Below are positions 3,877-17,552 of a stretch of 64,000 nt of DNA, in pieces (the first letter of the stretch is position 1; each line of letters starts with the position of its first letter). The position numbers were made by a program, and so were the translations under genes. The notes under the pieces were generated by a model. The model saw only the letters and a program-made list of their open reading frames with translations. It ran no database searches and had not been told where the DNA came from. Location: positions 186,001 to 250,000 of the IMG/VR virus record IMGVR_UViG_3300023174_000038, one strand, 5' to 3'.

Positions 3877-5016
3877 ATGACTCATTTTAATCCTCATTCA
3901 AATGATTGGTTAAAAAATAAATTTGATATATATAAAGAACTTAGAGCTAGAGATAAAGCATACTGGAGTGAAACCTATCAATTATATGTTATTACTAGAT
4001 ATGCCGATGTAAAATATGCGCTAAGTGAACATGATATCTTCTCATCTGCTAAGGGAAACTTAATAGTAGAAATGCCCTTTAGATTTGGCAGAACGTTAGG
4101 TGCTAGTGACAACCCATCACATGATGTATTTAAAAATATAGTAAAAAATGCGTATAGTAAGGATAATATAAATCGTATAGTAGATTTATTTTCTATTAAG
4201 GCAATAGAGTTACTTGAGAATAAACAATCGTTTAATGTTTCTACCGTTATAGAAGAACTAAGTGCTTGGGTAACTGCAGAAATATTAAACCTACCTTATG
4301 ATAAAGAACAGGTTAAAAATATCATTTTAGGTATACAGCGTCATAGTCCAGGATGTGTTTCAGTTAATGTAGATAGAACGTATTTAAATATATTTACTAA
4401 GTTACTTGATGACTTAACATCTAGAAAAGTAAAACCCACTGGTCCGGGTATATATAAAGAATTTATGACTAATCATCCAGATGTACAACCGGTAATGTCT
4501 TTGTTTCATGGACCAACTATATCCGGAGCTAGTTCACTTACCGGAGCATTAGAATTTTTAACATTAGATGTAGTTAGAGAAAATCAATTAGATATATTAT
4601 TAGAAGATAGGAATAATATTCCCAGCGTAATAGAAGAATCATTAAGATTTCATGCATCAACTGGTAGATTTTCTAGAACAGTAACTAAAGATGTAACACT
4701 ACATGGGATTGACCTTAAACCAGGTGATAGAGTTGCGTTATGTTTAGAATCTGCAAATAGAGACCCTGAAAAATTCATAGACCCTGAGAAATTCATTCTT
4801 AATAGAAGTACAGTTGGTCAATTAGCATTTGGTCATGGATTACATGCTTGTATAGCATTAGCTATTAGTAAATCAATAATGACTAAATATTTAGATATAT
4901 TATTAGATGTTGTTGGCAAATACAAAATAACAACATCTAATTCTGAATTAGAATATGTAATGACTGCATCCGGCAATGATGATATGATATCTAATATATG
5001 TATAGAAAAAATATAA
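3877..5016 (+). CDS. Cytochrome P450
   Basis: EESLR (ExxR), SANRDPEKF, heme motif FGHGLHACIA. Confidence 0.93.
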   Translation: MTHFNPHSNDWLKNKFDIYKELRARDKAYWSETYQLYVITRYADVKYALSEHDIFSSAKGNLIVEMPFRFGRTLGASDNPSHDVFKNIVKNAYSKDNINRIVDLFSIKAIELLENKQSFNVSTVIEELSAWVTAEILNLPYDKEQVKNIILGIQRHSPGCVSVNVDRTYLNIFTKLLDDLTSRKVKPTGPGIYKEFMTNHPDVQPVMSLFHGPTISGASSLTGALEFLTLDVVRENQLDILLEDRNNIPSVIEESLRFHASTGRFSRTVTKDVTLHGIDLKPGDRVALCLESANRDPEKFIDPEKFILNRSTVGQLAFGHGLHACIALAISKSIMTKYLDILLDVVGKYKITTSNSELEYVMTASGNDDMISNICIEKI

Positions 5017-6759: not shown

Positions 6760-7374
6760 TTAGTTCCTTTTCTTATATAAATCTCTTTCATTATTGTAAC
6801 GATTGAATTTACGACCTTTAATCCAACCCTGGTCATAATAGTGAGGATAAAGCGCATATGGAATACATTGACTCTTGCTCAAATCAAAGTTTGAAACCCA
6901 GATAGTATTTCCTTTAGCATTTCCTTTCCTTTCTTTTGTCCAACTAAGGCGTTGTCCATGTGAACTGGCCGCTAGGTATTTTTCACGATAAACGGCATCA
7001 TTTAACATTCTATCTCGGTGCTTTAATCCTGCAATCTTAGCAGCCTTGGTTTGCTGTCCCGGTTGATGTCCTTGATTAGGTAATGTGTTTATATAAGAAA
7101 AGGAACCGTGGCCCCCTTCTACTATATTATAAGTAGTGTCTAAACTAACGAAATCCGCGTTTACGACCTGTTTTTCTCTAAATAACATTGATTCTTTGTC
7201 ATTGAAGTGTTCAATGATTTCTTTGACAAAATTCTCTTTACCATATTTTTTGATTGCACGATGAAGATTCAGACCGGATCCAAAGTACCCATCATTTAAG
7301 TCGGAAGTTTGATGAACACCTATATAGATTTTATTATTTAATGTATTGGTGATTTTGTATAGATAATAGAACAT
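6760..7374 (-). CDS. GIY-YIG homing endonuclease (Seg-like)
   Basis: YLYKITN...KIYIG, YFGSG, AIKKYGKENF, YNIVEGG. Confidence 0.88.
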   Translation of the reverse strand: MFYYLYKITNTLNNKIYIGVHQTSDLNDGYFGSGLNLHRAIKKYGKENFVKEIIEHFNDKESMLFREKQVVNADFVSLDTTYNIVEGGHGSFSYINTLPNQGHQPGQQTKAAKIAGLKHRDRMLNDAVYREKYLAASSHGQRLSWTKERKGNAKGNTIWVSNFDLSKSQCIPYALYPHYYDQGWIKGRKFNRYNNERDLYKKRN

Positions 7375-7428
7375 ATTGTATTTATACGGACAGTAAGATG
7401 AAACTATATTAATATACTAACCCTATCA

Positions 7429-7529
7429 TGTCGTGTAGTGATACACGGCATTCTAAAACATACATCGTGGAAAATAAGGCCAAGAGGGCAACCCTGTTGA
7501 TTAGGGTGTACTATGTGTGTTTTAGAATG
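7429..7529 (+). ncRNA. Candidate structured ncRNA B (long closing stem)
   Basis: Hairpin TGTCGTGTA/TACACGGCA then 17-bp stem CATTCTAAAACATACAT/ATGTGTGTTTTAGAATG ending at the tRNA-Arg start. Confidence 0.55.
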
Positions 7530-7605
7530 CGACCGTAACTCAGTGGATTAGAGTACCTGTCTACGAAATAGGGAGTCGGAGGTTCAAGTCCTTCCGGTCG
7601 CACCA
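7529..7605 (+). tRNA. tRNA-Arg(ACG)
   Basis: Cloverleaf, anticodon arm CCTGT-CT ACG AA-ATAGG, encoded CCA. Confidence 0.95.
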
Positions 7606-7611
7606 ATATAT

Positions 7612-7687
7612 GGGACCATAGCTCAGTCGGTAGAGCAGTGGACTTTTAATCCATTGGTCGGGCGTTCGAACCGCCCTGGTCCCACCA
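7612..7687 (+). tRNA. tRNA-Lys(TTT)
   Basis: GTGGA-CT TTT AA-TCCAT, CCA. Confidence 0.95.
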
Positions 7688-7693
7688 TAATAT

Positions 7694-7783
7694 GGAAACG
7701 TGGCAGAGTTTGGTTTATTGCAACAGTCTTGAAAACTGTCGGTCCGAAAGGGCCCGTGAGTTCAAATCTCACCGTTTCTACCA
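7694..7783 (+). tRNA. tRNA-Ser(TGA)
   Basis: ACAGT-CT TGA AA-ACTGT, long variable arm, CCA. Confidence 0.95.
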
Positions 7784-7784
7784 T

Positions 7785-7861
7785 GGTGCTTGTCGTCAAG
7801 CGGTTAAGACCTCGGATTGTGATTCCGATATGCGTGGGTTCAAATCCCATCAAGCACCCCA
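7785..7861 (+). tRNA. tRNA-His(GTG)
   Basis: TCGGA-TT GTG AT-TCCGA, G-1:C73, CCA. Confidence 0.95.
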
Positions 7862-7862
7862 T

Positions 7863-7937
7863 GGATGTATAGCACAGCGGTAGTGCAATTCCTTCATACG
7901 GAATAGGTCAGTAGTTCAAATCTACTTACATCCACCA
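7863..7937 (+). tRNA. tRNA-Met(CAT), probably elongator
   Basis: ATTCC-TT CAT AC-GGAAT, CCA. Confidence 0.85.
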
Positions 7938-7942
7938 AACAT

Positions 7943-8016
7943 GCCCGGTTAGTTAAAAAGTATAACACACCCCTGATAAGGGTGAATCAGAGGAGCATTA
8001 CCTCTACTGGGTACCA
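7943..8016 (+). tRNA. tRNA-Ile(GAT), atypical D and T loops
   Basis: CACCC-CT GAT AA-GGGTG; acceptor GCCCGGT/ACTGGGT-A-CCA; T loop AGCATTA. Confidence 0.8.
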
Positions 8017-8023
8017 AATTTAC

Positions 8024-8097
8024 TGGGGGTTAGTTAAATGGTATAACATCGGATTTTGATTCCGAGATCACAAGTTCAATTCTTGTACCCTCTGCCA
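8024..8097 (+). tRNA. tRNA-Gln(TTG)
   Basis: TCGGA-TT TTG AT-TCCGA, CCA. Confidence 0.92.
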
Positions 8098-8179
8098 GTT
8101 ACGGAATATAATAAAGCCAAATTGATTGACAATCTGATATTAATCCTATTATAATGTTAAAAATTATATAGAAAGGTAT

Positions 8180-8503
8180 GTGATGGCAGGCAGATACATC
8201 GTTAGAAAATTTAAAAACGGAGTTAAGCATTTTTGGGATACTGATACAGGCAGTTGTATACACTGGTCTAAAGTCCAAGAGCGTATACCTAAAAAAGAAT
8301 TTGACAAATTATTTGAACAATTCAACAATAAACAACCAAAAAAAGAAAATGTTACTGAGCCACTTCCAAAACTATCTGAAATTTTGAGTGAAGTAATTAA
8401 CTTATATTCTGAAAAAATTTCAATAGAAGAAATAGTTGGAGCATTGGAGTTGTGCAAGACCCGTGCGTTAACAATGCATAAAATAAAAAAAATAAATCAA
8501 TGA
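8180..8503 (+). CDS. Hypothetical protein
   Basis: ORF after TTGACA-18-TATAAT (8126-8155) with AAGG SD. Confidence 0.65.
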   Translation: MMAGRYIVRKFKNGVKHFWDTDTGSCIHWSKVQERIPKKEFDKLFEQFNNKQPKKENVTEPLPKLSEILSEVINLYSEKISIEEIVGALELCKTRALTMHKIKKINQ

Positions 8504-8664
8504 GAGTGCCAGTTATGGGATAGACGATAGATTTGAGTCCCTGTCAATCTAGTCACAGTGGGGTTAACTGTGATGACACTATAGTATGATTTACGGGTGT
8601 ATAAACTTGCCTATACGAGACAATCTAACGAGGCTTACTAACAATAAGATAGTTAGGCTCCCTC
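8502..8664 (+). ncRNA. Candidate structured ncRNA C
   Basis: Hairpins TAGATT/AATCTA, TCACAGT/ACTGTGA, GTATA/TATAC, CTAAC/GTTAG; partial end pairing. Confidence 0.5.
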
Positions 8665-8671
8665 TTTTATC

Positions 8672-8746
8672 GGGTCCTTAGTTCAATGGATAGAATACGA
8701 TGCTTCGAACTTCGGGATGTGGGTTCAATTCCTGCAGGACCCGCCA
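8672..8746 (+). tRNA. tRNA-Arg(TCG)
   Basis: CGATG-CT TCG AA-CTTCG, acceptor GGGTCCT/AGGACCC-G-CCA. Confidence 0.88.
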
Positions 8747-8793
8747 TATGGCATTAAATACATATAGTGATAATAACAGAAAAGGAGTACTAC

Positions 8794-9354
8794 ATGGCTG
8801 TTCTAGCACTAGATATCTCGGGAGTTCCCCGGCAATGGATATCAAATGATGACGCAATTACCTATAAAGCAAAAGATGCCATAGCATGGTCAATGGGTAA
8901 TATTGTGGCTAAATATCGTGGTGGCATACAAAATGACGGTACATTAAGTTACTTAGAAGCTAATAGCATTATTGCTATCAAAGGTCATGGATTCAATCCA
9001 TACAAACACTCATGTGTTGCATTAACTAATAAAACATTGTTTGGTCGTGATAGACATGTATGTGCTTATTGCGGTGAACAGTTTCCAAACTATCATCTAT
9101 TAAGTCGTGACCACATTGTTCCACGTAGCAAAGGTGGTGAAAACACTTGGATGAATGTTGTTACCAGTTGTAAAACTTGTAACAGCAAAAAAGGACATAA
9201 GAGTTTAAAAGAAGTACGTATGGAATTACTATATGCACCTTATGTCCCAAACCACTACGAAAATATGATATTACAACATAGAACAATACTTGCTGACCAA
9301 ATGGAATATTTGTTAGCAGGTGTTCCAAAACATAGTAGAATATTATTAAGTTAG
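8794..9354 (+). CDS. HNH endonuclease family protein
   Basis: RDRHVCAYCG, SRDHIVPRSKGG, NVVTSCKTCNSKK; AAGGAG SD before ATG 8794. Confidence 0.9.
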   Translation: MAVLALDISGVPRQWISNDDAITYKAKDAIAWSMGNIVAKYRGGIQNDGTLSYLEANSIIAIKGHGFNPYKHSCVALTNKTLFGRDRHVCAYCGEQFPNYHLLSRDHIVPRSKGGENTWMNVVTSCKTCNSKKGHKSLKEVRMELLYAPYVPNHYENMILQHRTILADQMEYLLAGVPKHSRILLS

Positions 9355-9379
9355 TGTATAATACTATTAAATAAAATAC

Positions 9380-9454
9380 TCCCTTATAGCTCAGTGGTAG
9401 AGCAGCGCCCTTGTAAGGCGAAGGTCCCGTGTTCAAGTCATGGTGGGGGAACCA
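9380..9454 (+). tRNA. tRNA-Thr(TGT)
   Basis: CGCC-CT TGT AA-GGCG, CCA. Confidence 0.93.
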
Positions 9455-9461
9455 AATATAT

Positions 9462-9537
9462 TCTCTTGTAGCTCAGTCGGTAGAGCGTTTGACTGTTAAT
9501 CAAAATGTCCCTGGTTCGAGCCCAGGCAAGGGAGCCA
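9462..9537 (+). tRNA. tRNA-Asn(GTT)
   Basis: TTTGA-CT GTT AA-TCAAA, CCA. Confidence 0.95.
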
Positions 9538-9542
9538 AATTT

Positions 9543-10241
9543 ATGCATAAGATAAAAATATTCAGTCATATCATTGATACCCCAGATAGTTTAATGATTT
9601 TTAATAATCAATTCTCTTTACTTAAAGAAACTGGGTTACTAGACGTGGCATACAAAATATATCTATGCGTTAACGGAGAAGTATCTAAATTTGATACAAT
9701 ACAAGAATTAGCGAATCAATATCATAATGTAGAAATGATTCATACCAATACTAGTATTGAACATTATGAATATCCCACATTAAATTTTCTTAAAGAAAAT
9801 ATTGATAACGATACTGATTCTTATATTTTGTATTTTCATGTTAAAGGTGCTAGTAAAAACGAATCCAAAGATATACGTAATTGGCGTTTTCTATTAGAAT
9901 ACTATAATATCATAAAATATCAAACCTGTATAGATTATCTTAACAAGGGATATGATACAGTTGGTATACTATATAGAGAGGGTTTTCATAGTCAATGGCT
10001 ACACTATAGTGGAAACTTTTGGTGGGCTAATTCTAATCATATTAAGCGTTTACCTAAATTACCTCACCCATCTGATACATTAGGTGGCGGGAATAGTAAA
10101 ATTAGTATGTTGCCGTATATGAATGAAAACTTTAGATATGACCATGAAGCTTGGATAGGTTGTGTCAAACCCTGGAATTATATATCGTTGTTCCAAGATG
10201 ATATAGAAGAAGAAACACGTAGGATAATGAAATTATGTTAG
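9543..10241 (+). CDS. Hypothetical protein, possibly glycosyltransferase-like
   Basis: YEYPTL, LYFHVKG, HYSGNFWWA motifs; start moved past the tRNAs. Confidence 0.6.
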   Translation: MHKIKIFSHIIDTPDSLMIFNNQFSLLKETGLLDVAYKIYLCVNGEVSKFDTIQELANQYHNVEMIHTNTSIEHYEYPTLNFLKENIDNDTDSYILYFHVKGASKNESKDIRNWRFLLEYYNIIKYQTCIDYLNKGYDTVGILYREGFHSQWLHYSGNFWWANSNHIKRLPKLPHPSDTLGGGNSKISMLPYMNENFRYDHEAWIGCVKPWNYISLFQDDIEEETRRIMKLC

Positions 10242-10951
10242 TATCAGTAGACCCTTTTTATCATGTAACCATTGACAATTTTTTTGAGGAATCTTTAGCA
10301 GAAAAACTATCTAATGAATTTATTGATTATAATGATGAACGTTGGTTTTATTACAATAATGTTATTGAAAATAAAAAAACATTAAACGATTGGAGATTTT
10401 TACCCAAACATATATATCAAGCATTCACTCAGTTTTGCTCAGATGAATTTGTTAAAAAACTACAAGATATGACTGGTATAGAAAAATTGTATCCTGATTA
10501 TGGATTGCATGGTGGCGGCTGTCATATGCATGGTAGAAACGGTAAACTTAATATACATAGAGATTATTCTATACACCCTAAATTAGGATTAGAACGAAAG
10601 TTAAATCTTATTATATATCTATCTAAAGATTGGGATACGTCATGGGGAGGTGGATTAGAATTATGGTCACACGATGATGAAAACAATCAACCAAAAGAAA
10701 AAGTAAAAGAAGTAGAATGTGTTTTTAATCGTGCTGTACTTTTTGATACGACACAAGATTCTTGGCATGGTTTACCTGAACCCTTACGTTGTCCTGCAGG
10801 TGTCTATAGAAAAAGTTTAGCTATGTATTATATGACTAACCCTAGCCTAGAGGTTGACCCAAGACAACGGGCATTATTTGCACCCACAGAAAATCAGAAA
10901 AATGATATTGAAGTAAAAAACTTCATAGAAGAAAGAACAAAGCTTTCTTAA
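10235..10951 (+). CDS. 2OG-Fe(II) oxygenase
   Basis: HRD...LIIYL..WGGGLELW..FNRAVLF..SWHG..RKS. Confidence 0.88.
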   Translation: MLVSVDPFYHVTIDNFFEESLAEKLSNEFIDYNDERWFYYNNVIENKKTLNDWRFLPKHIYQAFTQFCSDEFVKKLQDMTGIEKLYPDYGLHGGGCHMHGRNGKLNIHRDYSIHPKLGLERKLNLIIYLSKDWDTSWGGGLELWSHDDENNQPKEKVKEVECVFNRAVLFDTTQDSWHGLPEPLRCPAGVYRKSLAMYYMTNPSLEVDPRQRALFAPTENQKNDIEVKNFIEERTKLS

Positions 10952-10954
10952 TAG

Positions 10955-11029
10955 CTGGCGTTAGTATAATGGATAATACAATCGGCTTCTACCCGATGAA
11001 TGTGGGTTCGATTCCTGCACGCCGGACCA
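10955..11029 (+). tRNA. tRNA-Arg(TCT)
   Basis: ATCGG-CT TCT AC-CCGAT, CCA. Confidence 0.92.
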
Positions 11030-11083
11030 AATAATATACGTATTTTATAGGTTAGAGATAAATACTCTAACCGAGGAGAGAGT

Positions 11084-11425
11084 ATGTGGAAATGTAAAAC
11101 ATGTGAAAAAGAAGGACAGGAACATTTTTATAAAAGCCAAGCTTGGTATTGTAAAAGTTGTTGGAATGTTCGTACGGCACACCGATCTAAAAACAATGTA
11201 AAAATTCTTAAAGAAGAATACGGTGGAAAATGCACCAAGTGTGGTTACAATAAATGCATGGATGCACTACAGTTTCACCATGTTGATCCTACTAAAAAGG
11301 AATTTTCATTAGGGTTAGCAAGACAAAAAAATTTAGATAAACTTAGAAAAGAGATGGACAAGTGTATTTTGGTTTGTAGTAATTGTCATATTGAAATTCA
11401 CCATGACATACATAAAAATAAATAA
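11084..11425 (+). CDS. HNH endonuclease with Zn-binding Cys pairs
   Basis: CxxC pairs, LQFHHVDP, CILVCSNCH. Confidence 0.85.
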   Translation: MWKCKTCEKEGQEHFYKSQAWYCKSCWNVRTAHRSKNNVKILKEEYGGKCTKCGYNKCMDALQFHHVDPTKKEFSLGLARQKNLDKLRKEMDKCILVCSNCHIEIHHDIHKNK

Positions 11426-11427
11426 AA

Positions 11428-11456
11428 TAGAGGTTCGATTCCTCTACGCCGGACCA
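11428..11456 (+). repeat. Duplicated 3' end (T arm and acceptor strand) of tRNA-Arg(TCT)
   Basis: AGAGGTTCGATTCCTCTACGCCGGACCA vs GTGGGTTCGATTCCTGCACGCCGGACCA at 11002-11029. Confidence 0.9.
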
Positions 11457-12035
11457 TTATTGAATTAGAAGTTGCCAATCTTCATTGCTATAGTGATAAT
11501 CTTCCAACACTTCTAGCATTCTTGCAAAGACAATTAATCCTCTTTTGTGATTAATTAATTCTATTTGATGTAATTTTATCTTCTTTTCAGCAAAAGTTTT
11601 TAATAAATTCTCACCCTCTTTTTTCAACTTAATTTTTTTTGAAACAATATTCAATTTGGCTATTAGATTGTTACATTCTACGATGGCAACAGAGGTTTGT
11701 TGTTGTAATGCACGTATTTCTATTTTCATTTTTAGTATTAAGTCATCAAATTCTGGGTTAATGTGTGGTAGAAATTGTGTTATCATAACAGACAGTCTAC
11801 CAAAGACTTCAGTATTAAGATTGAAGTCATCATAGTGATCACCTGTTGAATCATAGTGTTCACGTTTAGTTGGATCACTTAACACTTCATATGCTAATTT
11901 CATTCGCTTAAACTTTTCTACATCTCCTCCCTTGTCAGGATGATATAATTGTGCCAAGATTCTGTATTTTTGTTTGATTTCTTCAGACGTACAGGTTTTT
12001 GGTAATTCTAAATCATCGTATAGGGAGGTTGTCAT
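11457..12035 (-). CDS. DnaJ-domain protein
   Basis: LYDDLEL...YHPDKGG...AYEVLSDPTKREHYD. Confidence 0.88.
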   Translation of the reverse strand: MTTSLYDDLELPKTCTSEEIKQKYRILAQLYHPDKGGDVEKFKRMKLAYEVLSDPTKREHYDSTGDHYDDFNLNTEVFGRLSVMITQFLPHINPEFDDLILKMKIEIRALQQQTSVAIVECNNLIAKLNIVSKKIKLKKEGENLLKTFAEKKIKLHQIELINHKRGLIVFARMLEVLEDYHYSNEDWQLLIQ

Positions 12036-12088
12036 AACAATATTTATCATGAAATATTGCATGTAGTATTAAGTACTATGTTTAAAAT

Positions 12089-12198
12089 TTGACAATAAAT
12101 CCTCAATCTGCTATACTCTAGTTATAGATTGATTGAACAAGTTTTTGGGAAACAGTGAAACAAAAGAATTTGACAATAAATGGTAGTTATGATACAAT
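12089..12198 (+). promoter_or_regulatory. Two tandem sigma70-type promoters
   Basis: TTGACAATAAAT...TATACT and TTGACAATAAAT...TACAAT, 17-nt spacers. Confidence 0.75.
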
Positions 12199-12286
12199 CA
12201 TAGCATGAGTTGAGAAAGTCATCGTACTAATCAACAAGGTTCTTTAAAATTCTGAGTTATCATATAGCCCTGTTTAAGTTACAGGG

Positions 12287-12501
12287 ACTATATGAAAATA
12301 CATTAAGGTCACCTAATCCGTTAGGCAGGTCTATGGGGTCAGCCGGTGGACGACGCCGGGTCGCATAGGGTGCAAGAAGCGTATCGACAATAGCAATATT
12401 GTTTAACGTGACGGGCAGTTAGGCAGTAATGACAGAAACAACGATCCAGTAGACGGTACTGGTGGATACAGTTTACGTTCCTTAATGTGTTTTCATATAG
12501 T
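12287..12501 (+). ncRNA. Candidate structured ncRNA D (22-bp closing stem)
   Basis: ACTATATGAAAATACATTAAGG/CCTTAATGTGTTTTCATATAGT enclosing a GC-rich multibranch core. Confidence 0.65.
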
Positions 12502-12502
12502 G

Positions 12503-12629
12503 TGTTATTAGTTTTGCTGACGTAAGCGCCTGAGTAAACGTCAACTCTAACTAACTATGTATAGAAACGGTAAACTTGCAAATAATTCCGTTGAGCATAG
12601 CAAATAGTGCGTCAGCAAAACTAATAACA
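12503..12629 (+). ncRNA. Candidate structured ncRNA E (22-bp closing stem)
   Basis: TGTTATTAGTTTTGCTGACGTA/TGCGTCAGCAAAACTAATAACA, ends 1 nt before tRNA-Glu. Confidence 0.65.
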
Positions 12630-12630
12630 T

Positions 12631-12705
12631 GGAGCATTCGTCTATCGGTTAGGACATTAGGTTTTCATCCTAAGAAGAGGAGTTCGATTCTCCTATGCTC
12701 TTCCA
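12631..12705 (+). tRNA. tRNA-Glu(TTC)
   Basis: TTAGG-TT TTC AT-CCTAA, CCA. Confidence 0.93.
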
Positions 12706-12708
12706 AAG

Positions 12709-12905
12709 AATCCCGTTACTACTTTCGTTAAAGTAGCGTTTGAATAGCGATAGAGTTCCGGTGGCAGAAAACCGTTAGCGTGAGGATTAAAAATACCCTC
12801 GCAGGCTCTGATAGGCAGAATCTCAACTGCACACAGACTTTGAATAAATGGAGATGGACAGAGTAACTGCTCAATTAAGGGCTTGTGTGGAAACAAGTAG
12901 CTTAT
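12709..12905 (+). ncRNA. Candidate structured ncRNA F
   Basis: Hairpins CTACTTT/AAAGTAG, CGGT/ACCG, GCGTGAGG/CCTCGC, GAG-TAACTG-CTC, CTTGT/ACAAG. Confidence 0.5.
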
Positions 12906-12915
12906 ACTAATTTTT

Positions 12916-12978
12916 TGAGTTACATCGCCTTGATACTTCTCTCAGTAATGAGACACTAGGTCTTGCAACCGTAACTCA
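12916..12978 (+). ncRNA. Small tRNA-sized structured element G
   Basis: TGAGTTAC/GTAACTCA closing stem; inner TCTCA-GTAA-TGAGA. Confidence 0.4.
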
Positions 12979-12982
12979 TCTT

Positions 12983-13068
12983 GGAGATGTAGGAAAATTG
13001 GTAACCCCAGGAGACTGTAAATCTTCCGCCTTATGGCACTACTGGTTCAACTCCAGTCGTCTCCACCA
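12983..13068 (+). tRNA. tRNA-Tyr(GTA)
   Basis: GGAGA-CT GTA AA-TCTTC, variable arm, CCA. Confidence 0.93.
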
Positions 13069-13135
13069 AGAATATAGGAGGGTCGCTGGGCAGGCGTACT
13101 CTTAAACGACCTAGGCCAAAGGGGTGTCCTATTCT
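13069..13135 (+). ncRNA. Small structured element H
   Basis: ATAGGA/TCCTAT outer stem, GGGTCG/CGACCT inner stem. Confidence 0.4.
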
Positions 13136-13141
13136 GTGTTA

Positions 13142-13216
13142 GGTCTCAAAGTGTTCACGGACGCATACATGCCTGTCACGCATGAGGAGCGGGATCGTTA
13201 CCCGCTGGGACCGCCA
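13142..13216 (+). tRNA. tRNA-Asp(GTC), atypical T loop
   Basis: CATGC-CT GTC AC-GCATG; T loop ATCGTTA; GCCA end. Confidence 0.88.
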
Positions 13217-13262
13217 AAATATTTGACAACAATCATTGTATGATATATAGATAACAAGTTTT

Positions 13263-13347
13263 GCGAGTGTGGTGGAATCGGAATACACACAAGACTTAAA
13301 ATCTTGCGCCGCAAGGATTGAGGGTTCAAGTCCCTCCACTCGCACCA
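13263..13347 (+). tRNA. tRNA-Leu(TAA)
   Basis: CAAGA-CT TAA AA-TCTTG, variable arm, CCA. Confidence 0.95.
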
Positions 13348-13356
13348 AAGAATGAT

Positions 13357-13433
13357 GCCTCTATAGCGCAATTGGTTAGCGCAGCGGACTCATAATCCGT
13401 TGGTTCCTGGTTCGAGTCCAGGTGGAGGCACCA
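13357..13433 (+). tRNA. tRNA(CAT), probably Ile2 (lysidine type)
   Basis: GCGGA-CT CAT AA-TCCGT; context resembles proteobacterial tRNA-Ile2. Confidence 0.8.
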
Positions 13434-13441
13434 GTTAAGCA

Positions 13442-13533
13442 GGAGACGTGGCCGAGTGGCCGAAGGCAGCAGGTTGCTAACCTGTCGTATGTAGTAATAT
13501 GTACCGTGAGTTCGAATCTCACCGTCTCCACCA
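13442..13533 (+). tRNA. tRNA-Ser(GCT)
   Basis: GCAGG-TT GCT AA-CCTGT, long variable arm, CCA. Confidence 0.95.
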
Positions 13534-13534
13534 A

Positions 13535-13717
13535 TTAGCGATGGTTTGTTTTGTTTATGATTTGATGTAAGATGTTAGGATCATCACTCATCATCCTAGC
13601 TAGTAAACCAGTAAGATAACCCCGTTCATATAATAATTGTTCGTGGCTATCTTTGTAATTACGTTTGTTTTGACGCAACAACTTTTCAACAACATCAATA
13701 CAGTTTTGTAGTTCCAT
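13535..13717 (-). CDS. Small hypothetical protein (MELQNC...)
   Basis: TAAATA 4 nt upstream of ATG 13717. Confidence 0.6.
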   Translation of the reverse strand: MELQNCIDVVEKLLRQNKRNYKDSHEQLLYERGYLTGLLARMMSDDPNILHQIINKTNHR

Positions 13718-13732
13718 ACTGTATTTATAAAA

Positions 13733-13930
13733 GAACGTTCCGGGTGTCTCCGGATAGTGTGACCCACACGATGAGAAGTAGTGTGACAACTACGGGTGGT
13801 AGTCTTTAAACCGAAAGGCCGCTAGCAATGCGAGAACGGTCCCTGTCGGGAAGCGGGTGGAAGGAGTGTGTGATGGGTATGATAGCGTCATATCTTGATA
13901 CTCTATAATTACCGCCGGGGGATGCAGAGC
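13733..13930 (+). ncRNA. Candidate structured ncRNA I
   Basis: GC-rich; hairpins TCCGG/CCGGA, GTGTG/CACAC, GTAGT/ACTAC, TATGA/TCATA; TCCCT/GGGGA. Confidence 0.55.
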
Positions 13931-13936
13931 ATATAT

Positions 13937-14014
13937 GCAACGGTGGCAGAGTGGTCCAATGCAACGGATTGCAAATCCGTAAAACCGTCAGTTCAAATCT
14001 GACCCGTTGCTCCA
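13937..14014 (+). tRNA. tRNA-Cys(GCA)
   Basis: ACGGA-TT GCA AA-TCCGT, U73-CCA. Confidence 0.93.
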
Positions 14015-14019
14015 AACAA

Positions 14020-14184
14020 TTATAGTGCTTGTATAAAAGCAAGTGCTGTTTCAATATTATTGAAGAATTTCATAGTCAATTTGAAATTGTCAACATCAAA
14101 TACCATAATGTAAAATGTATGTTCAGCACTCATTGATAAGTGTATAACAAGTCCTGTTTTCGTGATAGCGTCATATATGTACAT
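14020..14184 (-). CDS. Small hypothetical protein (MYIYDAITK...)
   Basis: TAAATA 5 nt upstream of ATG 14184; longer ORF overlaps tRNA-Gly. Confidence 0.55.
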   Translation of the reverse strand: MYIYDAITKTGLVIHLSMSAEHTFYIMVFDVDNFKLTMKFFNNIETALAFIQAL

Positions 14185-14196
14185 AAATATATTTAT

Positions 14197-14270
14197 GCGG
14201 GGTTCGTATAGTGGTAATACCTCAGCCTTCCAAGCTGATGCGGAGAGTTCGATTCTCTTACCCCGCTCCA
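14197..14270 (+). tRNA. tRNA-Gly(TCC)
   Basis: TCAGC-CT TCC AA-GCTGA, U73-CCA. Confidence 0.95.
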
Positions 14271-14286
14271 TTATTATAAATATCAT

Positions 14287-14817
14287 ATGAAATTACTATT
14301 TGTGCCATTAGATATAAAAGTCACTGATATCAACTTTGATTTAGGTGAAAAACAAAACTATCACATAAATCATTGGGAAACATTTGATGTTATTGGGAAA
14401 GAAAATAATTATCAAAACTATAACAGTTTATTAAATCAACTTCCAATAACGGATATCACTATCTTTACACATAAGATTCAAAAAACTAAAATTGGACCTC
14501 ATTATGATTATCATGGTTTGCATGATGAATTATATAAACATTTCAAAGAAAATGAGCCAGCCGGCTATCATGTAGTTTTAAAAGGTAAAGGTGACTCATT
14601 AGAAATTTTTAACGGCAAAGAATGGATTAACCCTATATTACCTAAAGTGCCTATAGCATACTTACTAAATTTAACTTCTTGCATACATAGAGTAAAAGAA
14701 GATAATTCAAGAGAAACACTGTATATACAAGGTTGGTTAGATATTAAAAAACATAATCAATTAATAGAACGCAGTTTAAAACAATATGGCAATCTAGCAG
14801 TATATAGCCAAGCTTAA
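14287..14817 (+). CDS. Hypothetical protein, possible double-stranded beta-helix oxygenase
   Basis: PHYD...IHRV...R pattern; TATAAATA upstream. Confidence 0.5.
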   Translation: MKLLFVPLDIKVTDINFDLGEKQNYHINHWETFDVIGKENNYQNYNSLLNQLPITDITIFTHKIQKTKIGPHYDYHGLHDELYKHFKENEPAGYHVVLKGKGDSLEIFNGKEWINPILPKVPIAYLLNLTSCIHRVKEDNSRETLYIQGWLDIKKHNQLIERSLKQYGNLAVYSQA

Positions 14818-15093
14818 TTATTTACCAATTCTATTTAAAATGTTCATTGCTCTGGTTCTTAACCGTTCAGTAAATTCTGATTCAGTTAATGCTCCTTTAG
14901 CAAGATTACATTTTCTACAAGTTACTTGAAGATTATTATACGTGGTTTCTCCACCTTTACTTTCAGCAATCACATGATCTATGTGTATTTCTTTATCGGA
15001 TAAGTCTTCATCACAATAGACACACCATTTTCCGTCCCTTTCAATAACTCTACGACGTAGGTTAAGAGGGATGTATTGTTTCTTTTGTAGCAT
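14818..15093 (-). CDS. HNH endonuclease
   Basis: RDGKWCVYC, HIDHVIAESKGG, NLQVTCRKCNLAK. Confidence 0.9.
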   Translation of the reverse strand: MLQKKQYIPLNLRRRVIERDGKWCVYCDEDLSDKEIHIDHVIAESKGGETTYNNLQVTCRKCNLAKGALTESEFTERLRTRAMNILNRIGK

Positions 15094-15158
15094 AAATTTA
15101 TTTAGCTACCCAAATATAGTAGACAGATAAATAGTTTTCTGTTATTATGAATAATAAA

Positions 15159-15243
15159 GCGGACGTGGCGTAATTGGCAGCCGCACCAGATTTAGGTTCT
15201 GGCGTCGTAAGATGTGTGAGTTCGAGTCTCACCGTCCGCACCA
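15159..15243 (+). tRNA. tRNA-Leu(TAG)
   Basis: CCAGA-TT TAG GT-TCTGG, CCA. Confidence 0.95.
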
Positions 15244-15247
15244 AACA

Positions 15248-15321
15248 GGGGGATTGATGTAATGGGAGCCTGGGACCTTTGCAAGGTCTTCGTAACAGTT
15301 CGATTCTGTTATCCTCCACCA
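15248..15321 (+). tRNA. tRNA-Ala(TGC)
   Basis: GGACC-TT TGC AA-GGTCT; G3:U70; CCA. Confidence 0.9.
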
Positions 15322-15327
15322 AGATAG

Positions 15328-15402
15328 CGCGGGGTAGAGAAGTAGTAACTCATCAGGCTCATAACCTGAAGATCGGCGGTGCGAATCCGTCCCCCGCATC
15401 CA
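15328..15402 (+). tRNA. Initiator tRNA-fMet(CAT)
   Basis: CGCGGGG/CCCCGCA with C1:A72 mismatch; TCAGG-CT CAT AA-CCTGA. Confidence 0.9.
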
Positions 15403-15406
15403 GTTA

Positions 15407-15483
15407 CGGAGTGTGGCGCAGTCTGGTAGCGCACCTGGTTTGGGACCAGGGGGTCCAAGGTTCGAATCCTTGTACTCCGACCA
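15407..15483 (+). tRNA. tRNA-Pro(TGG)
   Basis: CCTGG-TT TGG GA-CCAGG, CCA. Confidence 0.95.
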
Positions 15484-15505
15484 ATGTTTTTAAAAAGGAA
15501 ATAGT

Positions 15506-15670
15506 ATGACATGCAGAGGATATGATGCGAAAGCAGTGAAAGTTTCAAAGACAGTTAAACGTGCCGCGGCAAAAATTATGGACAACCATAAGCGTGGTGA
15601 CTTTATTCGTAGTTATGTAGAGATTGAAAGAAGTAATTCACGTACAGGTTCTCGTAAGGATAGCAAATGA
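15506..15670 (+). CDS. Small basic hypothetical protein (MTCRGYDAK...)
   Basis: 54-aa ORF with AAGGA SD. Confidence 0.55.
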   Translation: MTCRGYDAKAVKVSKTVKRAAAKIMDNHKRGDFIRSYVEIERSNSRTGSRKDSK

Positions 15671-15846
15671 GTAAAGGTAGCTTGCCAAGACCTTATAGTG
15701 TTGATTTGAAAACTTTCAACAATAATTGGGATAATATCTTTCGCAAGCCTGATCCAAGAATTATTGAGGATCAAAAGAATGAAGATGAAGCATTTGAACA
15801 AATTGCTAGTCAATCAGAAGTTAAAGATAGTACCCAAGGTGGTTAA
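15667..15846 (+). CDS. Small hypothetical protein (MSKGSLPRP...)
   Basis: 59-aa ORF coupled by ATGA overlap. Confidence 0.55.
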   Translation: MSKGSLPRPYSVDLKTFNNNWDNIFRKPDPRIIEDQKNEDEAFEQIASQSEVKDSTQGG

Positions 15847-15855
15847 ATAGAATGT

Positions 15856-15930
15856 GGATCGTTAACTCAGTGGTAGAGTAGCGCCTTTACACGGCGAATG
15901 TCGGGAGTTCGACCCTCTCACGATCCACCA
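15856..15930 (+). tRNA. tRNA-Val(TAC)
   Basis: CGCC-TT TAC AC-GGCG, CCA. Confidence 0.93.
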
Positions 15931-15945
15931 AACAAAGGAGTAATT

Positions 15946-16086
15946 ATGAGCAAAAGTGAAGATGTAATTAATAGAGCATACGGACACATTGTCAAAGAAG
16001 TTACTCCGGTACTTATTTTTGATATTACTATATTTCGTGGTTTTAAATACTATTGGTACAAATTACTTAGAAAAGTAACAAGATAA
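15946..16086 (+). CDS. Small hypothetical protein
   Basis: AAGGAG SD then ATG 15946. Confidence 0.5.
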   Translation: MSKSEDVINRAYGHIVKEVTPVLIFDITIFRGFKYYWYKLLRKVTR

Positions 16087-16090
16087 AATT

Positions 16091-16627
16091 ATGGCACATC
16101 CGCAACAATTTAATTATATACAAAAACTTAAACTATTATATCCAACTCATTTCTTTAATAGCAAAGTACTTGAAGTGGGTAGTCTTAACATTAATGGTTC
16201 AATACGAATCTTTTTTAGTCATTGTGATTATTTAGGAATTGATGTTGGTCCGGGTAATGATGTTGACTTAGTATGTGAAGGTCAAACGTTAGATCATCCA
16301 GACAATACATATGATACAGTTGGTAGCTGTGAATGTTTTGAACATAATCCTTATTGGGTAGAAACATTCGTTAACATGCATCGTATGGCTAAACCAAATG
16401 GACTAGTGTTTATGACATGTGCTACTACTGGTAGACCAGAACACGGTACTACTCGTACTACACCACAAGATAGTCCTCTTACTACAGGTATAGGGTGGGA
16501 CTATTATAGAAATTTAACTGAAGAAGATTTCAGAAAAGAATTAGACATAGATAATATGTTTAGTACATATAAATTTGAAGTGGGTTCACCCCATGCAGAT
16601 TTGTATTTTTATGGTATTAAAAAATAA
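16091..16627 (+). CDS. Class I SAM-dependent methyltransferase
   Basis: VLEVGS, YLGIDVGPG, CFEHNP. Confidence 0.8.
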   Translation: MAHPQQFNYIQKLKLLYPTHFFNSKVLEVGSLNINGSIRIFFSHCDYLGIDVGPGNDVDLVCEGQTLDHPDNTYDTVGSCECFEHNPYWVETFVNMHRMAKPNGLVFMTCATTGRPEHGTTRTTPQDSPLTTGIGWDYYRNLTEEDFRKELDIDNMFSTYKFEVGSPHADLYFYGIKK

Positions 16628-16635
16628 AGGTAAAT

Positions 16636-16857
16636 ATGTCACAAAGCAGAGCAAGATATTCAAGTGAAGAAGCCGCACTTATGGTCGGTAATCGTTTTGA
16701 TTTAGTTCTTATCGCTTCACAAAGAGTAAGAGAATTAAAGCGAGGACATCGTTCACTACTTACTACTAAAGCAGGACCAATGGTAACTGCATTAGAAGAA
16801 ATTGAACAAGGACTTGTTGGACGTGAATATCTTAAACGTATTAGAAAAAATTTGTAA
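16636..16857 (+). CDS. rpoZ: RNA polymerase omega subunit
   Basis: ARYSSEEA..VGNRFDLVLIASQRVREL..ALEEIEQG. Confidence 0.9.
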   Translation: MSQSRARYSSEEAALMVGNRFDLVLIASQRVRELKRGHRSLLTTKAGPMVTALEEIEQGLVGREYLKRIRKNL

Positions 16858-16861
16858 ATAT

Positions 16862-16935
16862 ATCTCCCTAATGTAATGGCAGCATACCGGTCTCCAAAAC
16901 CGTTAGTCAAGGTTCGAGTCCTTGGGGGGATGCCA
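16862..16935 (+). tRNA. tRNA-Trp(CCA)
   Basis: CGGT-CT CCA AA-ACCG, G73-CCA. Confidence 0.9.
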
Positions 16936-16949
16936 AATAAAGGAATGTT

Positions 16950-17552
16950 ATGCCCGCTGTATTTTTAACAAGTGACACCCACTTTGGGCATGCCGGAGTA
17001 TGCCATTTCACACGTAACGATGGGGTTACAAAACTTCGCCCATGGACTGATCCAGATGAGATGGATGAAGAAATGGTTAAGCGTTGGAACGAAACAGTAC
17101 GACCTAATGATAAAGTATATCATTTGGGTGATGTTGTAATCAATCGTAAAGCACTAAAGATTATGAGTCGGTTAAACGGTGACAAAGTATTGATTCGTGG
17201 TAACCACGATATCTTCCGTGATGATGAGTATAGAGAACACTTTAGAGAGTTACGTGCCTATCATGTTATGAATGGAATGATATTAAGTCATATTCCTATA
17301 CATGAAGAATCATTGGGACGATTTGGTGTTAACATTCACGGTCATTTACATGCCAATCGTGTAATGAAACATGTTGAGACTTTACATGAGTTTCATGAAC
17401 GTGGTAGTAGACATTATATTGATGTACGTTATCATTGTGTATGTGTAGAACATACAGACTATAGACCTATATTGTTTGAAGATGTTATCAAACGCATTGA
17501 AAGTGAAGGTGGTACTGTAGGATTTAAGAACGGTAATGGACCTACAATGTAA
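16950..17552 (+). CDS. Calcineurin-like metallophosphoesterase
   Basis: SDTHFGH, LGD, GNHD, SH, HGHLH. Confidence 0.9.
   Translation: MPAVFLTSDTHFGHAGVCHFTRNDGVTKLRPWTDPDEMDEEMVKRWNETVRPNDKVYHLGDVVINRKALKIMSRLNGDKVLIRGNHDIFRDDEYREHFRELRAYHVMNGMILSHIPIHEESLGRFGVNIHGHLHANRVMKHVETLHEFHERGSRHYIDVRYHCVCVEHTDYRPILFEDVIKRIESEGGTVGFKNGNGPTM

What the first reader, a model, noticed from the sequence alone, without database searches (positions are those of the whole stretch)
10955..11456. HNH gene inserted at tRNA-Arg(TCT) with a recoded duplicate 3' end
Seen: the tRNA 3' 28 nt recur after the HNH gene, but with a different, still paired T stem (GTGGG/CCTGC vs AGAGG/CCTCT). No integrase is present. 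Established: free-standing homing endonucleases spread by gene conversion that alters their target. Inference: the element supplied a new, cleavage-resistant tRNA 3' end and displaced the original.
Basis: partly seen in the sequence, partly recalled or inferred. Interest (0 to 1): 0.62.

Follow-up and report, generated by a model that had tools for sequence, protein, structure and literature searches.

The report
Homing HNH gene replaced phage tRNA-Arg
In a 349-kb freshwater jumbo phage, a small mobile HNH nuclease gene arrived with its own complete tRNA-Arg(TCT) gene and overwrote most of the resident one, leaving a 28-base 3' stump; this shows selfish nucleases swapping tRNA alleles between phages.

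Summary
tRNA-Arg(TCT) lies at 10955-11029, a 113-aa HNH gene at 11084-11425, and an orphan 28-nt tRNA 3' end at 11429-11456. The orphan differs from the tRNA only at five T-stem bases that keep pairing.

Nine related contigs without the HNH gene carry an intact "type B" tRNA-Arg(TCT) against the same DnaJ-domain gene. Six of them also share the upstream oxygenase gene.

The incoming piece is larger than a recoded 3' end. It is a whole second natural allele, "type A", which also differs in the anticodon stem and is common in phages without the HNH gene.

The HNH gene belongs to a cassette family marked by an invariant 21-nt hairpin. In the roughly dozen distinct contexts found, the cassette starts 8-22 nt after a tRNA-Arg(TCT) or tRNA-Met gene. 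At least two other lineages carry 3' stumps that match natural alleles exactly.

Independent metagenomes confirm the arrangement, and also hold an HNH-free form in a near-identical background.

I read it as a free-standing homing endonuclease acting on tRNA genes, an HNH analogue of T4 SegB. Cleavage, and resistance of type A, are untested.

The parts
10235..10951 (+). 2OG-Fe(II) oxygenase gene; left syntenic anchor
   Evidence: Pfam 2OG-FeII_Oxy_3, E 2e-16. It is 88% nt identical to six HNH-free contigs right up to the first base of the tRNA.
10955..11029 (+). Intact tRNA-Arg(TCT), allele 'type A' (anticodon stem ATCGG/CCGAT, T stem GTGGG/CCTGC); the incoming tRNA
   Evidence: ARAGORN and Rfam tRNA at 56.3 bits. 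The same allele occurs in 18 viral contigs, most without an HNH gene.
11030..11083 (+). Cassette leader: spacer, 8-bp hairpin 11050-11057/11065-11072 with loop ATAAATA, SD GAGGAG at 11073-11078; an outer stem 11034-11039/11082-11087 covers the AUG
   Evidence: Fold energy -18.2 kcal/mol, z -4.9. The 21-nt core is identical before about 13 HNH genes whose proteins are only 43-75% identical to the window's. The SD or AUG is occluded in most of 18 leaders. The core occurs once in this genome.
11084..11425 (+). HNH endonuclease gene, 113 aa: N-terminal CxxC...CxxC ribbon plus HNH core; single copy in the genome
   Evidence: PHROG 2255, E 1.7e-26. tblastn finds 447 phage records, many annotated as HNH endonuclease. 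Invariant H65 H66 D68 N100 H102 H106 and eight Cys. AF2 pLDDT 87.8; the best structural hits are weak but mostly HNH nucleases. Single copy.
11429..11456 (+). Stump of the resident tRNA-Arg(TCT) 'type B': T arm AGAGG/CCTCT, acceptor 3' strand and CCA (nt 48-75; possibly from 11426 if the shared AAT is counted)
   Evidence: 28/28 identical to intact type B tRNAs at the same place in nine HNH-free contigs. It is not called as a tRNA.
11427..11447 (-). Terminator-like hairpin on the minus strand, formed by the stump's T arm and followed by a T-rich tail; lies just after the DnaJ stop
   Evidence: Consensus scan only: 7-pair stem, tail TTTATTTATT. Function is inferred.
11457..12062 (-). DnaJ-domain gene; right syntenic anchor, abutting the CCA of the stump as it abuts the CCA of intact type B in relatives
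   Evidence: Pfam DnaJ, E 1.3e-19. 13 related loci at 58-81% aa identity.

Best explanation
The 427-bp HNH cassette (leader hairpin plus HNH gene) is a free-standing homing-endonuclease gene that lives in phage tRNA arrays directly behind a tRNA gene. In this phage lineage the unit 'type A tRNA-Arg(TCT) + cassette' was copied from a co-infecting relative into the resident type B tRNA-Arg(TCT) gene.

The left join lies in the 5' 20-26 nt that the two alleles share. The right join is non-homologous (at most the 3-nt AAT) and falls at the boundary of variable loop and T stem. The event overwrote nt 1-47 of type B and left nt 48-75 as a stump. The phage keeps a working tRNA-Arg(TCT), now of another allele.

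Shown: the anatomy, the identity of the stump, the presence/absence polymorphism, the family-wide link to tRNA 3' ends, and recurrence of such stumps.

Inferred: that the HNH protein started the event by cutting or nicking the type B gene near nt 44-48; that type A, or the interrupted site, is spared; and that the leader hairpin keeps translation low on read-through tRNA transcripts.
For: (1) Synteny. Six contigs read oxygenase - type B - DnaJ, and three more read type B - DnaJ. The window reads oxygenase - type A - HNH - B(48-75) - DnaJ with identical spacing on both sides.

(2) Same unit in a sister locus. The nearest HNH genes (L013, L061; 73-75% aa) follow a type A tRNA with a homologous spacer and the same hairpin. 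Compared with L010 they are inserted within 3 nt of CCA.

(3) Mobility. The cassette is single-copy here and sporadic among relatives. A contig with about 97.5% identical oxygenase DNA lacks it. The stump is 28/28 intact while fourfold-degenerate sites in the flanking genes are 30-44% diverged from those relatives, so the event is recent or the stump is constrained.

(4) Family behaviour. About 13 HNH genes sharing the 21-nt hairpin all start 8-22 nt after a tRNA. The tRNA species (Arg-TCT or Met-CAT) splits on one well-supported branch of the HNH tree (96/95; 0 of 500 shuffles as low). Homologues in cultured phages S-WAM2, RCIP0023 and WPEC5 also sit behind tRNAs.

(5) Recurrence. L046 and L058 have a 43-nt tRNA-Arg(TCT) stump after the HNH stop. 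Each is 43/43 identical to a different intact allele found in HNH-free contigs L076-L078. Shorter stumps follow the HNH gene in L051/L055 and L059.

(6) Precedent. T4 SegB recognises the T-loop motif GGTTCRANTCC, cuts at the 3' ends of tRNA genes, drives co-conversion of flanking tRNA genes, and has a hairpin predicted to occlude its ribosome site (PMC2330249).
Against: No enzymology: neither cleavage of type B nor resistance of type A is shown.

In L013/L061 the HNH-plus and HNH-minus alleles carry the same type A tRNA and there is no stump. Recoding is therefore not required for this clade to persist.

The donor of the window's arrangement was not found. The right join therefore cannot be assigned to a mechanism: end joining, template switch, or inheritance of an older arrangement.

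Pfam HNH models do not reach significance on this protein and Foldseek E-values are all above 0.06. The HNH assignment rests on PHROGs, tblastn to annotated HNH genes and the conserved motif.

L015 = L027 has type A against DnaJ without an HNH gene. That fits loss of the HNH gene but equally fits tRNA exchange without any nuclease.
Confidence: 0.68

Rival explanations
1. Nuclease-independent recombination. tRNA arrays are permissive, repeat-rich regions. Type A plus a passenger HNH gene replaced part of type B by ordinary illegitimate or short-homology recombination between paralogous tRNA genes. The HNH protein plays no part, and may serve another role or be domesticated.
For: Types A, B and a third type are shuffled around the DnaJ gene in relatives without any HNH gene: B-DnaJ-A in L010, A-DnaJ in L015, and the tRNA on the other side of DnaJ in L029-L032. 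Public contigs join tRNA ends to other contexts (joints 11031>12163 and 11455>12084). The array holds several other nuclease genes.
Against: The cassette always sits at a fixed short distance behind a tRNA of a clade-specific species. L046 and L058 have diverged HNH genes, different sequence left of the join, and stumps matching two different natural alleles, yet both stumps start at the same tRNA position. That argues for a site-specific process.
Confidence: 0.2
2. Site-specific integration of a larger element, with the two 28-nt copies acting as attL/attR-like ends, as for integrase-driven islands at tRNA genes.
For: The layout (intact tRNA, insert, displaced 3' end) is the one that integrases produce (established knowledge).
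Against: The insert is 427 bp and encodes only the HNH protein. The neighbours are an oxygenase and a DnaJ protein. The two copies differ at 5 of 28 positions, and the incoming tRNA also differs upstream of any plausible core. The host is a lytic-type jumbo phage genome, not a chromosome.
Confidence: 0.02
3. Artefact or split gene: a chimeric metagenome assembly, or an intron-like insert in a tRNA that is spliced to give a hybrid of type A 5' part and type B 3' part.
For: The genome is a metagenome assembly. A hybrid of A(1-47) and B(48-75) would fold, because the T arm is self-contained.
Against: Contigs from two other studies bridge all the joins. No intron family or other RNA family matches 11030-11428 even at E up to 1. 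The upstream copy is already a complete tRNA.
Confidence: 0.02

Closest known systems
T4 SegB (GIY-YIG free-standing homing endonuclease in the T4 tRNA cluster; PMC2330249, PMC13096335)
   Same: A free-standing nuclease gene inside a phage tRNA array, directly behind a tRNA gene. SegB's recognition site contains the T-loop motif and it cuts at the 3' ends of tRNA genes. It drives co-inheritance of neighbouring tRNA genes with loss of the recipient's markers. A hairpin is predicted to occlude its ribosome site. Association with tRNAs is widespread among phages.
   Different: The catalytic fold differs (HNH here, GIY-YIG there). No activity is shown here. SegB homing was described between syntenic flanks. 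A leftover 3' stump of a different allele of the same tRNA behind the nuclease gene is not mentioned in the two SegB papers consulted (discussion, one results section and term searches only).
T5 F-TflI, F-TflII, F-TflIV (site-specific endonucleases encoded in the T5 tRNA gene region; Akulenko et al. 2004, cited in PMC2330249)
   Same: Nuclease ORFs located in a phage tRNA gene cluster (PMC2330249). That they are HNH-type nickases is from my own knowledge.
   Different: No sequence comparison was made here. No tRNA stump or tRNA allele replacement is known to me for them.
T4 Mob and Aeh1 MobE HNH homing endonucleases; intronless homing with co-conversion of flanking markers
   Same: A small free-standing HNH gene, sporadic among relatives, inserted between conserved genes, with translational control by RNA structure (as discussed in PMC2330249).
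   Different: Their targets are protein-coding genes such as nrd genes (my own knowledge). The target here is a tRNA gene, and part of the target survives as a stump.
Integrase-driven islands and prophages at tRNA genes
   Same: The same outcome: the element brings a replacement for the tRNA end and the original 3' end is displaced to its far side.
   Different: No recombinase is present, there is no identical core, the element is 427 bp, and a whole alternative tRNA allele is supplied.

Membership tests
HNH (His-Me finger) endonuclease | Sequence match to HNH family models | tested here: met
   PHROG 2255 'HNH endonuclease' at E 1.7e-26, plus five further PHROGs annotated as HNH endonuclease. 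tblastn hits to annotated phage HNH endonucleases down to 3e-24. However, Pfam HNH models give no hit even at E up to 10, and NCBIfam gives none.
HNH (His-Me finger) endonuclease | Catalytic His-His ... Asn ... His motif and the zinc-binding CxxC pairs conserved | tested here: met
   H65, H66, D68, N100, H102, H106 and C50, C53, C98, C101 are invariant in 14 sequences.
HNH (His-Me finger) endonuclease | beta-beta-alpha-metal fold | tested here: inconclusive
   The AF2 model has pLDDT 87.8, with strand 62-66, strand 94-98 and helix 99-111. Most of the best Foldseek hits are HNH nucleases (Cap5, PacI, Gme HNH, Cas9 HNH, T4 endonuclease VII, T5 SciA), but all have E >= 0.066 and TM <= 0.41.
Free-standing homing endonuclease gene | Presence/absence polymorphism at one locus among close relatives | tested here: met
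   Nine HNH-free contigs at the same place, and an HNH-free form next to oxygenase DNA about 97.5% identical to the window's. L013 compared with L010 gives a clean insertion behind CCA.
Free-standing homing endonuclease gene | Flanking markers replaced along with the gene (co-conversion) | tested here: met
   The tRNA next to the HNH gene is type A, where HNH-free syntenic relatives have type B (13 of 75 nt differ). This is a comparative inference, not a cross.
Free-standing homing endonuclease gene | Site-specific cleavage of the HNH-free allele, with the donor allele spared | not testable with these tools
   Needs enzyme assays on type B, on type A and on junction DNA.
Free-standing homing endonuclease gene | Nuclease-dependent preferential inheritance in mixed infection | not testable with these tools
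   The phage is uncultured, known only from lake metagenomes.
SegB family (GIY-YIG) | GIY-YIG catalytic domain | tested here: not met
   This protein has no GIY-YIG match. It works like SegB at most; it is not a member. A separate GIY-YIG/SegE-like ORF lies at 6760-7374.
Integrase-mediated tRNA-site island | Tyrosine or serine recombinase in the element, and identical att core repeats | tested here: not met
   The insert holds only the HNH ORF, and the repeats differ at 5 of 28 positions.

The most novel reading that the evidence does not exclude
These HNH cassettes are 'tRNA-bracketed' homing elements. They travel as intact replacement tRNA + nuclease gene + 3' stump of the target tRNA. The conserved 5' part of the tRNA serves as the left homology arm and the stump as the right one. 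They could then home into any phage that carries the target tRNA species, whatever its neighbouring genes, and each time swap the tRNA allele.

The start of the stump would mark the clade-specific cut site: nt 44-48 for the window's clade, the anticodon for the L046/L058 clade. Nuclease-driven turnover of tRNA alleles that differ in anticodon stem, variable loop and T stem could also matter for escape from host nucleases that target tRNAs.
Probability: 0.3. Interest if true: 0.72.

Novelty: new variant of a known kind. Interest (0 to 1): 0.55.

Why it matters
Homing endonucleases in phage tRNA clusters are known (T4 SegB, T5 F-Tfl enzymes). SegB was recently shown to remodel tRNA loci in ways that defeat host defences (PMC13096335).

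This locus adds an HNH family with a recognisable leader hairpin. It appears to enter tRNA genes themselves while bringing a working replacement. The event leaves a datable stump that tells which allele was there before, and possibly where the cut was made.

That gives a sequence-only way to trace tRNA allele replacement between uncultured jumbo phages. It also gives concrete substrates for testing a tRNA-gene-specific HNH nuclease: type A, type B and the junction DNA.

Tried and rejected
- Close and distant nucleotide searches of deposited phage genomes found no relative of the locus. They found only a marine-virus oxygenase homologue and tRNA-only hits.
- Pfam, NCBIfam and PDB sequence searches gave nothing for the HNH protein.
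- Foldseek against PDB gave only weak hits.
- Rfam at E up to 1 found only the tRNAs in 7000-17500. There is no intron or other RNA family in the insert or in the conserved non-coding stretch 12085-12630.
- I considered that the hairpin loop ATAAATA is a T4-type late promoter. TATAAATA is not enriched in the window (5 found, 14 expected), and the hairpin core occurs once in the genome. I make no promoter claim.
- The stump on its own does not fold better than shuffled sequence on the plus strand (z -0.6).
- A search with the oxygenase protein found no further HNH-bearing syntenic contig. The donor of the exact A-HNH-stump arrangement was not found.
- Integrase, assembly-artefact and split-tRNA readings are rejected for the reasons given under rival explanations.

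Full report
**What the window is.** The window is bases 186001-250000 of a 348,701-bp virus record that CheckV estimates as complete. It comes from a lake metagenome. G+C is about 35%. It carries 25 tRNA genes between 7.5 and 17 kb. No deposited phage genome is close at the nucleotide level.

**Checking the observation.**
- ARAGORN and Rfam place tRNA-Arg(TCT) at 10955-11029.
- An ORF of 113 aa runs from 11084 to 11425.
- The stretch 11429-11456 repeats the last 28 nt of the tRNA with 23 of 28 identical.
- The five differences all lie in the T stem and keep it paired: G-C, U-G, G-U become A-U, G-C, A-U.
- The acceptor 3' strand plus CCA occurs twice in the window against 0.02 expected, and only at these two places in the whole genome.
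- The neighbouring genes are a 2OG-Fe(II) oxygenase (10235-10951) and a DnaJ-domain protein (11457-12062, minus strand). Neither is a recombinase.
- Contigs from two other studies bridge the joins. One of 1606 nt covers 11000-12400 without a difference, and one of 464 nt covers 11004-11467 with two differences.

**The protein.** Pfam and NCBIfam do not recognise it. PHROG 2255 'HNH endonuclease' matches at 1.7e-26. tblastn finds 447 phage records, many annotated as HNH endonuclease. In an alignment of 14 relatives the HH...N...H residues, the two CxxC pairs of the HNH zinc site and an N-terminal CxxC...CxxC ribbon are invariant. An AlphaFold model is confident (pLDDT 87.8). Its Foldseek matches are weak (E at least 0.066) but are mostly HNH nucleases. 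The gene is single-copy in the genome.

**What relatives without the HNH gene carry.** I searched IMG/VR with the D-arm/anticodon-arm part of the tRNA, a pattern that leaves the T arm free, and with the DnaJ and oxygenase proteins. Two alleles of tRNA-Arg(TCT) emerged:

| Allele | Anticodon stem | T stem | Where found |
|---|---|---|---|
| Type A | ATCGG/CCGAT | GTGGG/CCTGC | the window's intact tRNA; 18 viral contigs, most without an HNH gene |
| Type B | GTAGC/GCTAT | AGAGG/CCTCT | against DnaJ in nine HNH-free contigs |

The two differ at 13 of 75 positions. Four base pairs are changed on both sides, two on one side, and three differences lie in unpaired bases.

- Six contigs (L006, L009, L010, L020, L022, L025) have the oxygenase gene at 88% nucleotide identity, then type B, then the DnaJ stop. 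Both flanks align with the window up to the first and last base of the tRNA.
- Three more (L021, L023, L026) have type B against DnaJ with another upstream neighbour.
- The last 28 nt of type B equal the window's stump 28/28.
- None of these nine contigs has the HNH gene.
- In a public run, a contig whose oxygenase DNA is about 97.5% identical to the window's runs into a tRNA that skips 10991 to 11426. Seven other letters lie in between, followed by 31 letters of the stump region. This is an HNH-free tRNA with the AGAGG arm in a near-identical background.

The incoming piece, however, is a whole alternative tRNA allele plus the HNH gene, not only a new 3' end.

**Type A exists independently of the HNH gene.**
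- It occurs on the other side of DnaJ in L006, L009, L010, L012 and L020, which carry both A and B.
- It lies directly against DnaJ in L015 = L027, with no HNH gene.
- It occurs in many other contexts.

**Where the unit came from.** The closest HNH genes (L013 and L061, 73-75% aa identity) follow a type A tRNA with a homologous 21-nt spacer and the same hairpin. Against L010, which has the same type A tRNA and the same downstream promoter region without the HNH gene, the insertion lies within three bases of CCA and leaves no stump. The window's region beyond DnaJ (from 12085) is nearly identical to the region that follows type A in L010. The backbone is therefore mosaic.

The simplest history is that 'type A + spacer + hairpin + HNH' was copied into a backbone of the form oxygenase - B - DnaJ. 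The left join falls in the 20-26 nt that A and B share at the 5' end. The right join has at most 3 nt of shared sequence (AAT) in front of the T stem of type B.

The stump has no change in 28 nt, whereas fourfold-degenerate sites in the flanking genes are 30-44% diverged from the type B relatives. Either the event is recent or the stump is constrained. On the minus strand, its T arm plus the T-rich run behind it scores as a terminator-like site just after the DnaJ stop. That could be such a constraint. This is inference.

**The cassette family.** The 21-nt hairpin core at 11051-11071 occurs once in this genome. It is found unchanged in front of about 13 distinct HNH genes in viral and metagenome contigs.
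- In every case the hairpin starts 8-22 nt behind the CCA of a tRNA-Arg(TCT) or tRNA-Met(CAT) inside a tRNA array.
- On the HNH tree the tRNA species splits on one branch (support 96/95; 0 of 500 label shuffles as low). The sample is small and the rows are related.
- In most of 18 distinct leaders the stem extends over the Shine-Dalgarno sequence. In the window, L013 and L061 it also covers the AUG. This resembles the occluding hairpins described for segB and the T4 intron endonucleases (PMC2330249).
- Homologues in cultured phages also sit behind tRNAs: S-WAM2 (Ala, running into Asn), Klebsiella phage RCIP0023 (Asn) and Escherichia phage WPEC5 (Met/Asn).

**Stumps recur.**
- In L046 and L058 the HNH stop codon is the TAA of a tRNA anticodon loop. 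It is followed by the rest of a tRNA-Arg(TCT).
- The 43 nt from the anticodon onward are 43/43 identical to intact alleles in HNH-free contigs: L076 for L046, and L077 and L078 for L058.
- Those two alleles differ from each other by a compensatory T-stem pair.
- The two HNH genes are strongly diverged and the sequence left of the join differs, yet both stumps start at the same tRNA position.
- In both loci the intact tRNA in front of the HNH gene is yet another allele.
- Shorter remnants (about 10-12 nt of acceptor strand plus CCA) follow the HNH gene in L051/L055 and L059.
- Elsewhere the HNH reading frame runs into the 5' end of the next intact tRNA (L044, L057, S-WAM2).

This recurrence argues for a site-directed process rather than a one-off accident.

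**Mechanism.** I take the cassette to be a free-standing homing endonuclease gene that acts on tRNA genes. The inferred sequence is:
1. During mixed infection the HNH protein breaks or nicks the resident tRNA-Arg(TCT) gene.
2. Repair copies the donor from the shared tRNA 5' part through type A and the HNH gene.
3. The right end rejoins with little or no homology, so the start of the stump (nt 44-48 here) would mark the break.

Whether type A is spared because of its different stems, or because the cassette interrupts the site behind CCA, is open. The L013/L010 comparison favours the second for this clade.

The closest described system is T4 SegB, a GIY-YIG enzyme. Its 27-bp site contains the T-loop motif, it cuts at tRNA 3' ends, and it carries neighbouring tRNA genes along (PMC2330249). 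Its association with tRNAs is widespread and it remodels tRNA loci (PMC13096335). This HNH protein is not a member of that family; it would only work like it. Searches of the paper library for truncated tRNAs next to homing endonucleases found nothing.

**Verdict.** The finding is real. The 'recoded, cleavage-resistant end' part must be replaced by 'a second natural tRNA allele came in with the nuclease gene'; resistance is untested. It is a new variant of a known kind of element and of moderate interest. Interest would rise if the stump-as-homology-arm idea, or a link to tRNA-targeting host defences, were confirmed.

No other genetic code was used.

Noticed in passing
window 12085-12630: A conserved non-coding stretch of about 550 nt lies between the DnaJ gene and tRNA-Glu. 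It is headed by two near-consensus sigma-70-type promoters (12089-12117 and 12170-12198, 11 of 12 matches each, with TG). It is nearly identical to L010 7380-7925 although the flanking genes are much more diverged. There is no Rfam match. It may be a structured RNA co-transcribed with tRNA-Glu.
   Followed up: partly
window 6760-7374 (-), 8767-9354 (+), 14818-15093 (-): Three further nuclease genes of homing type lie in or at the edge of the tRNA array: a GIY-YIG/SegE-like ORF just before the first tRNA, and two HNH_5 ORFs (one after tRNA-Arg(TCG), one between tRNA-Gly and tRNA-Leu). A gap of similar size (about 600-700 bp) follows tRNA-Arg(TCG) in most relatives, but I did not check what it holds.
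   Followed up: partly
window 11457-12062 and loci L006, L009, L010, L012, L020, L027, L029-L032: The DnaJ-domain gene lies on the opposite strand to the surrounding tRNA genes. In relatives it always abuts a tRNA-Arg(TCT), sometimes on one side, sometimes on the other, sometimes on both (B-DnaJ-A). Its C-terminal end comes in two unrelated versions. The gene itself may be a shuffled cassette.
   Followed up: no
window 8716-8737 and 10999-11020: The T arm of type A tRNA-Arg(TCT) is nearly the same as that of the neighbouring tRNA-Arg(TCG) (19 of 22 nt, same GTGGG/CCTGC stem).
   Followed up: no
public run X7, at window 10937: One contig carries a 17-nt insertion that repeats the end of the oxygenase gene just before the tRNA, a small tandem duplication at the left boundary in a close strain.
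   Followed up: no
L048 (hairpin at 4725 on the reverse strand): One cassette has a longer ORF with an extra N-terminal segment (it looks like a helix-turn-helix by eye) in front of the zinc ribbon of the HNH protein. The contig ends inside the ORF.
   Followed up: no
L049 (hairpin at 627): In one cassette the first ATG after the hairpin opens only a 13-codon frame, and HNH-like coding sequence continues in another frame behind its stop. It may be a frameshifted, decaying copy, or my start choice may be wrong. It lies between tRNA-Met and an intact tRNA-Arg(TCT).
   Followed up: no
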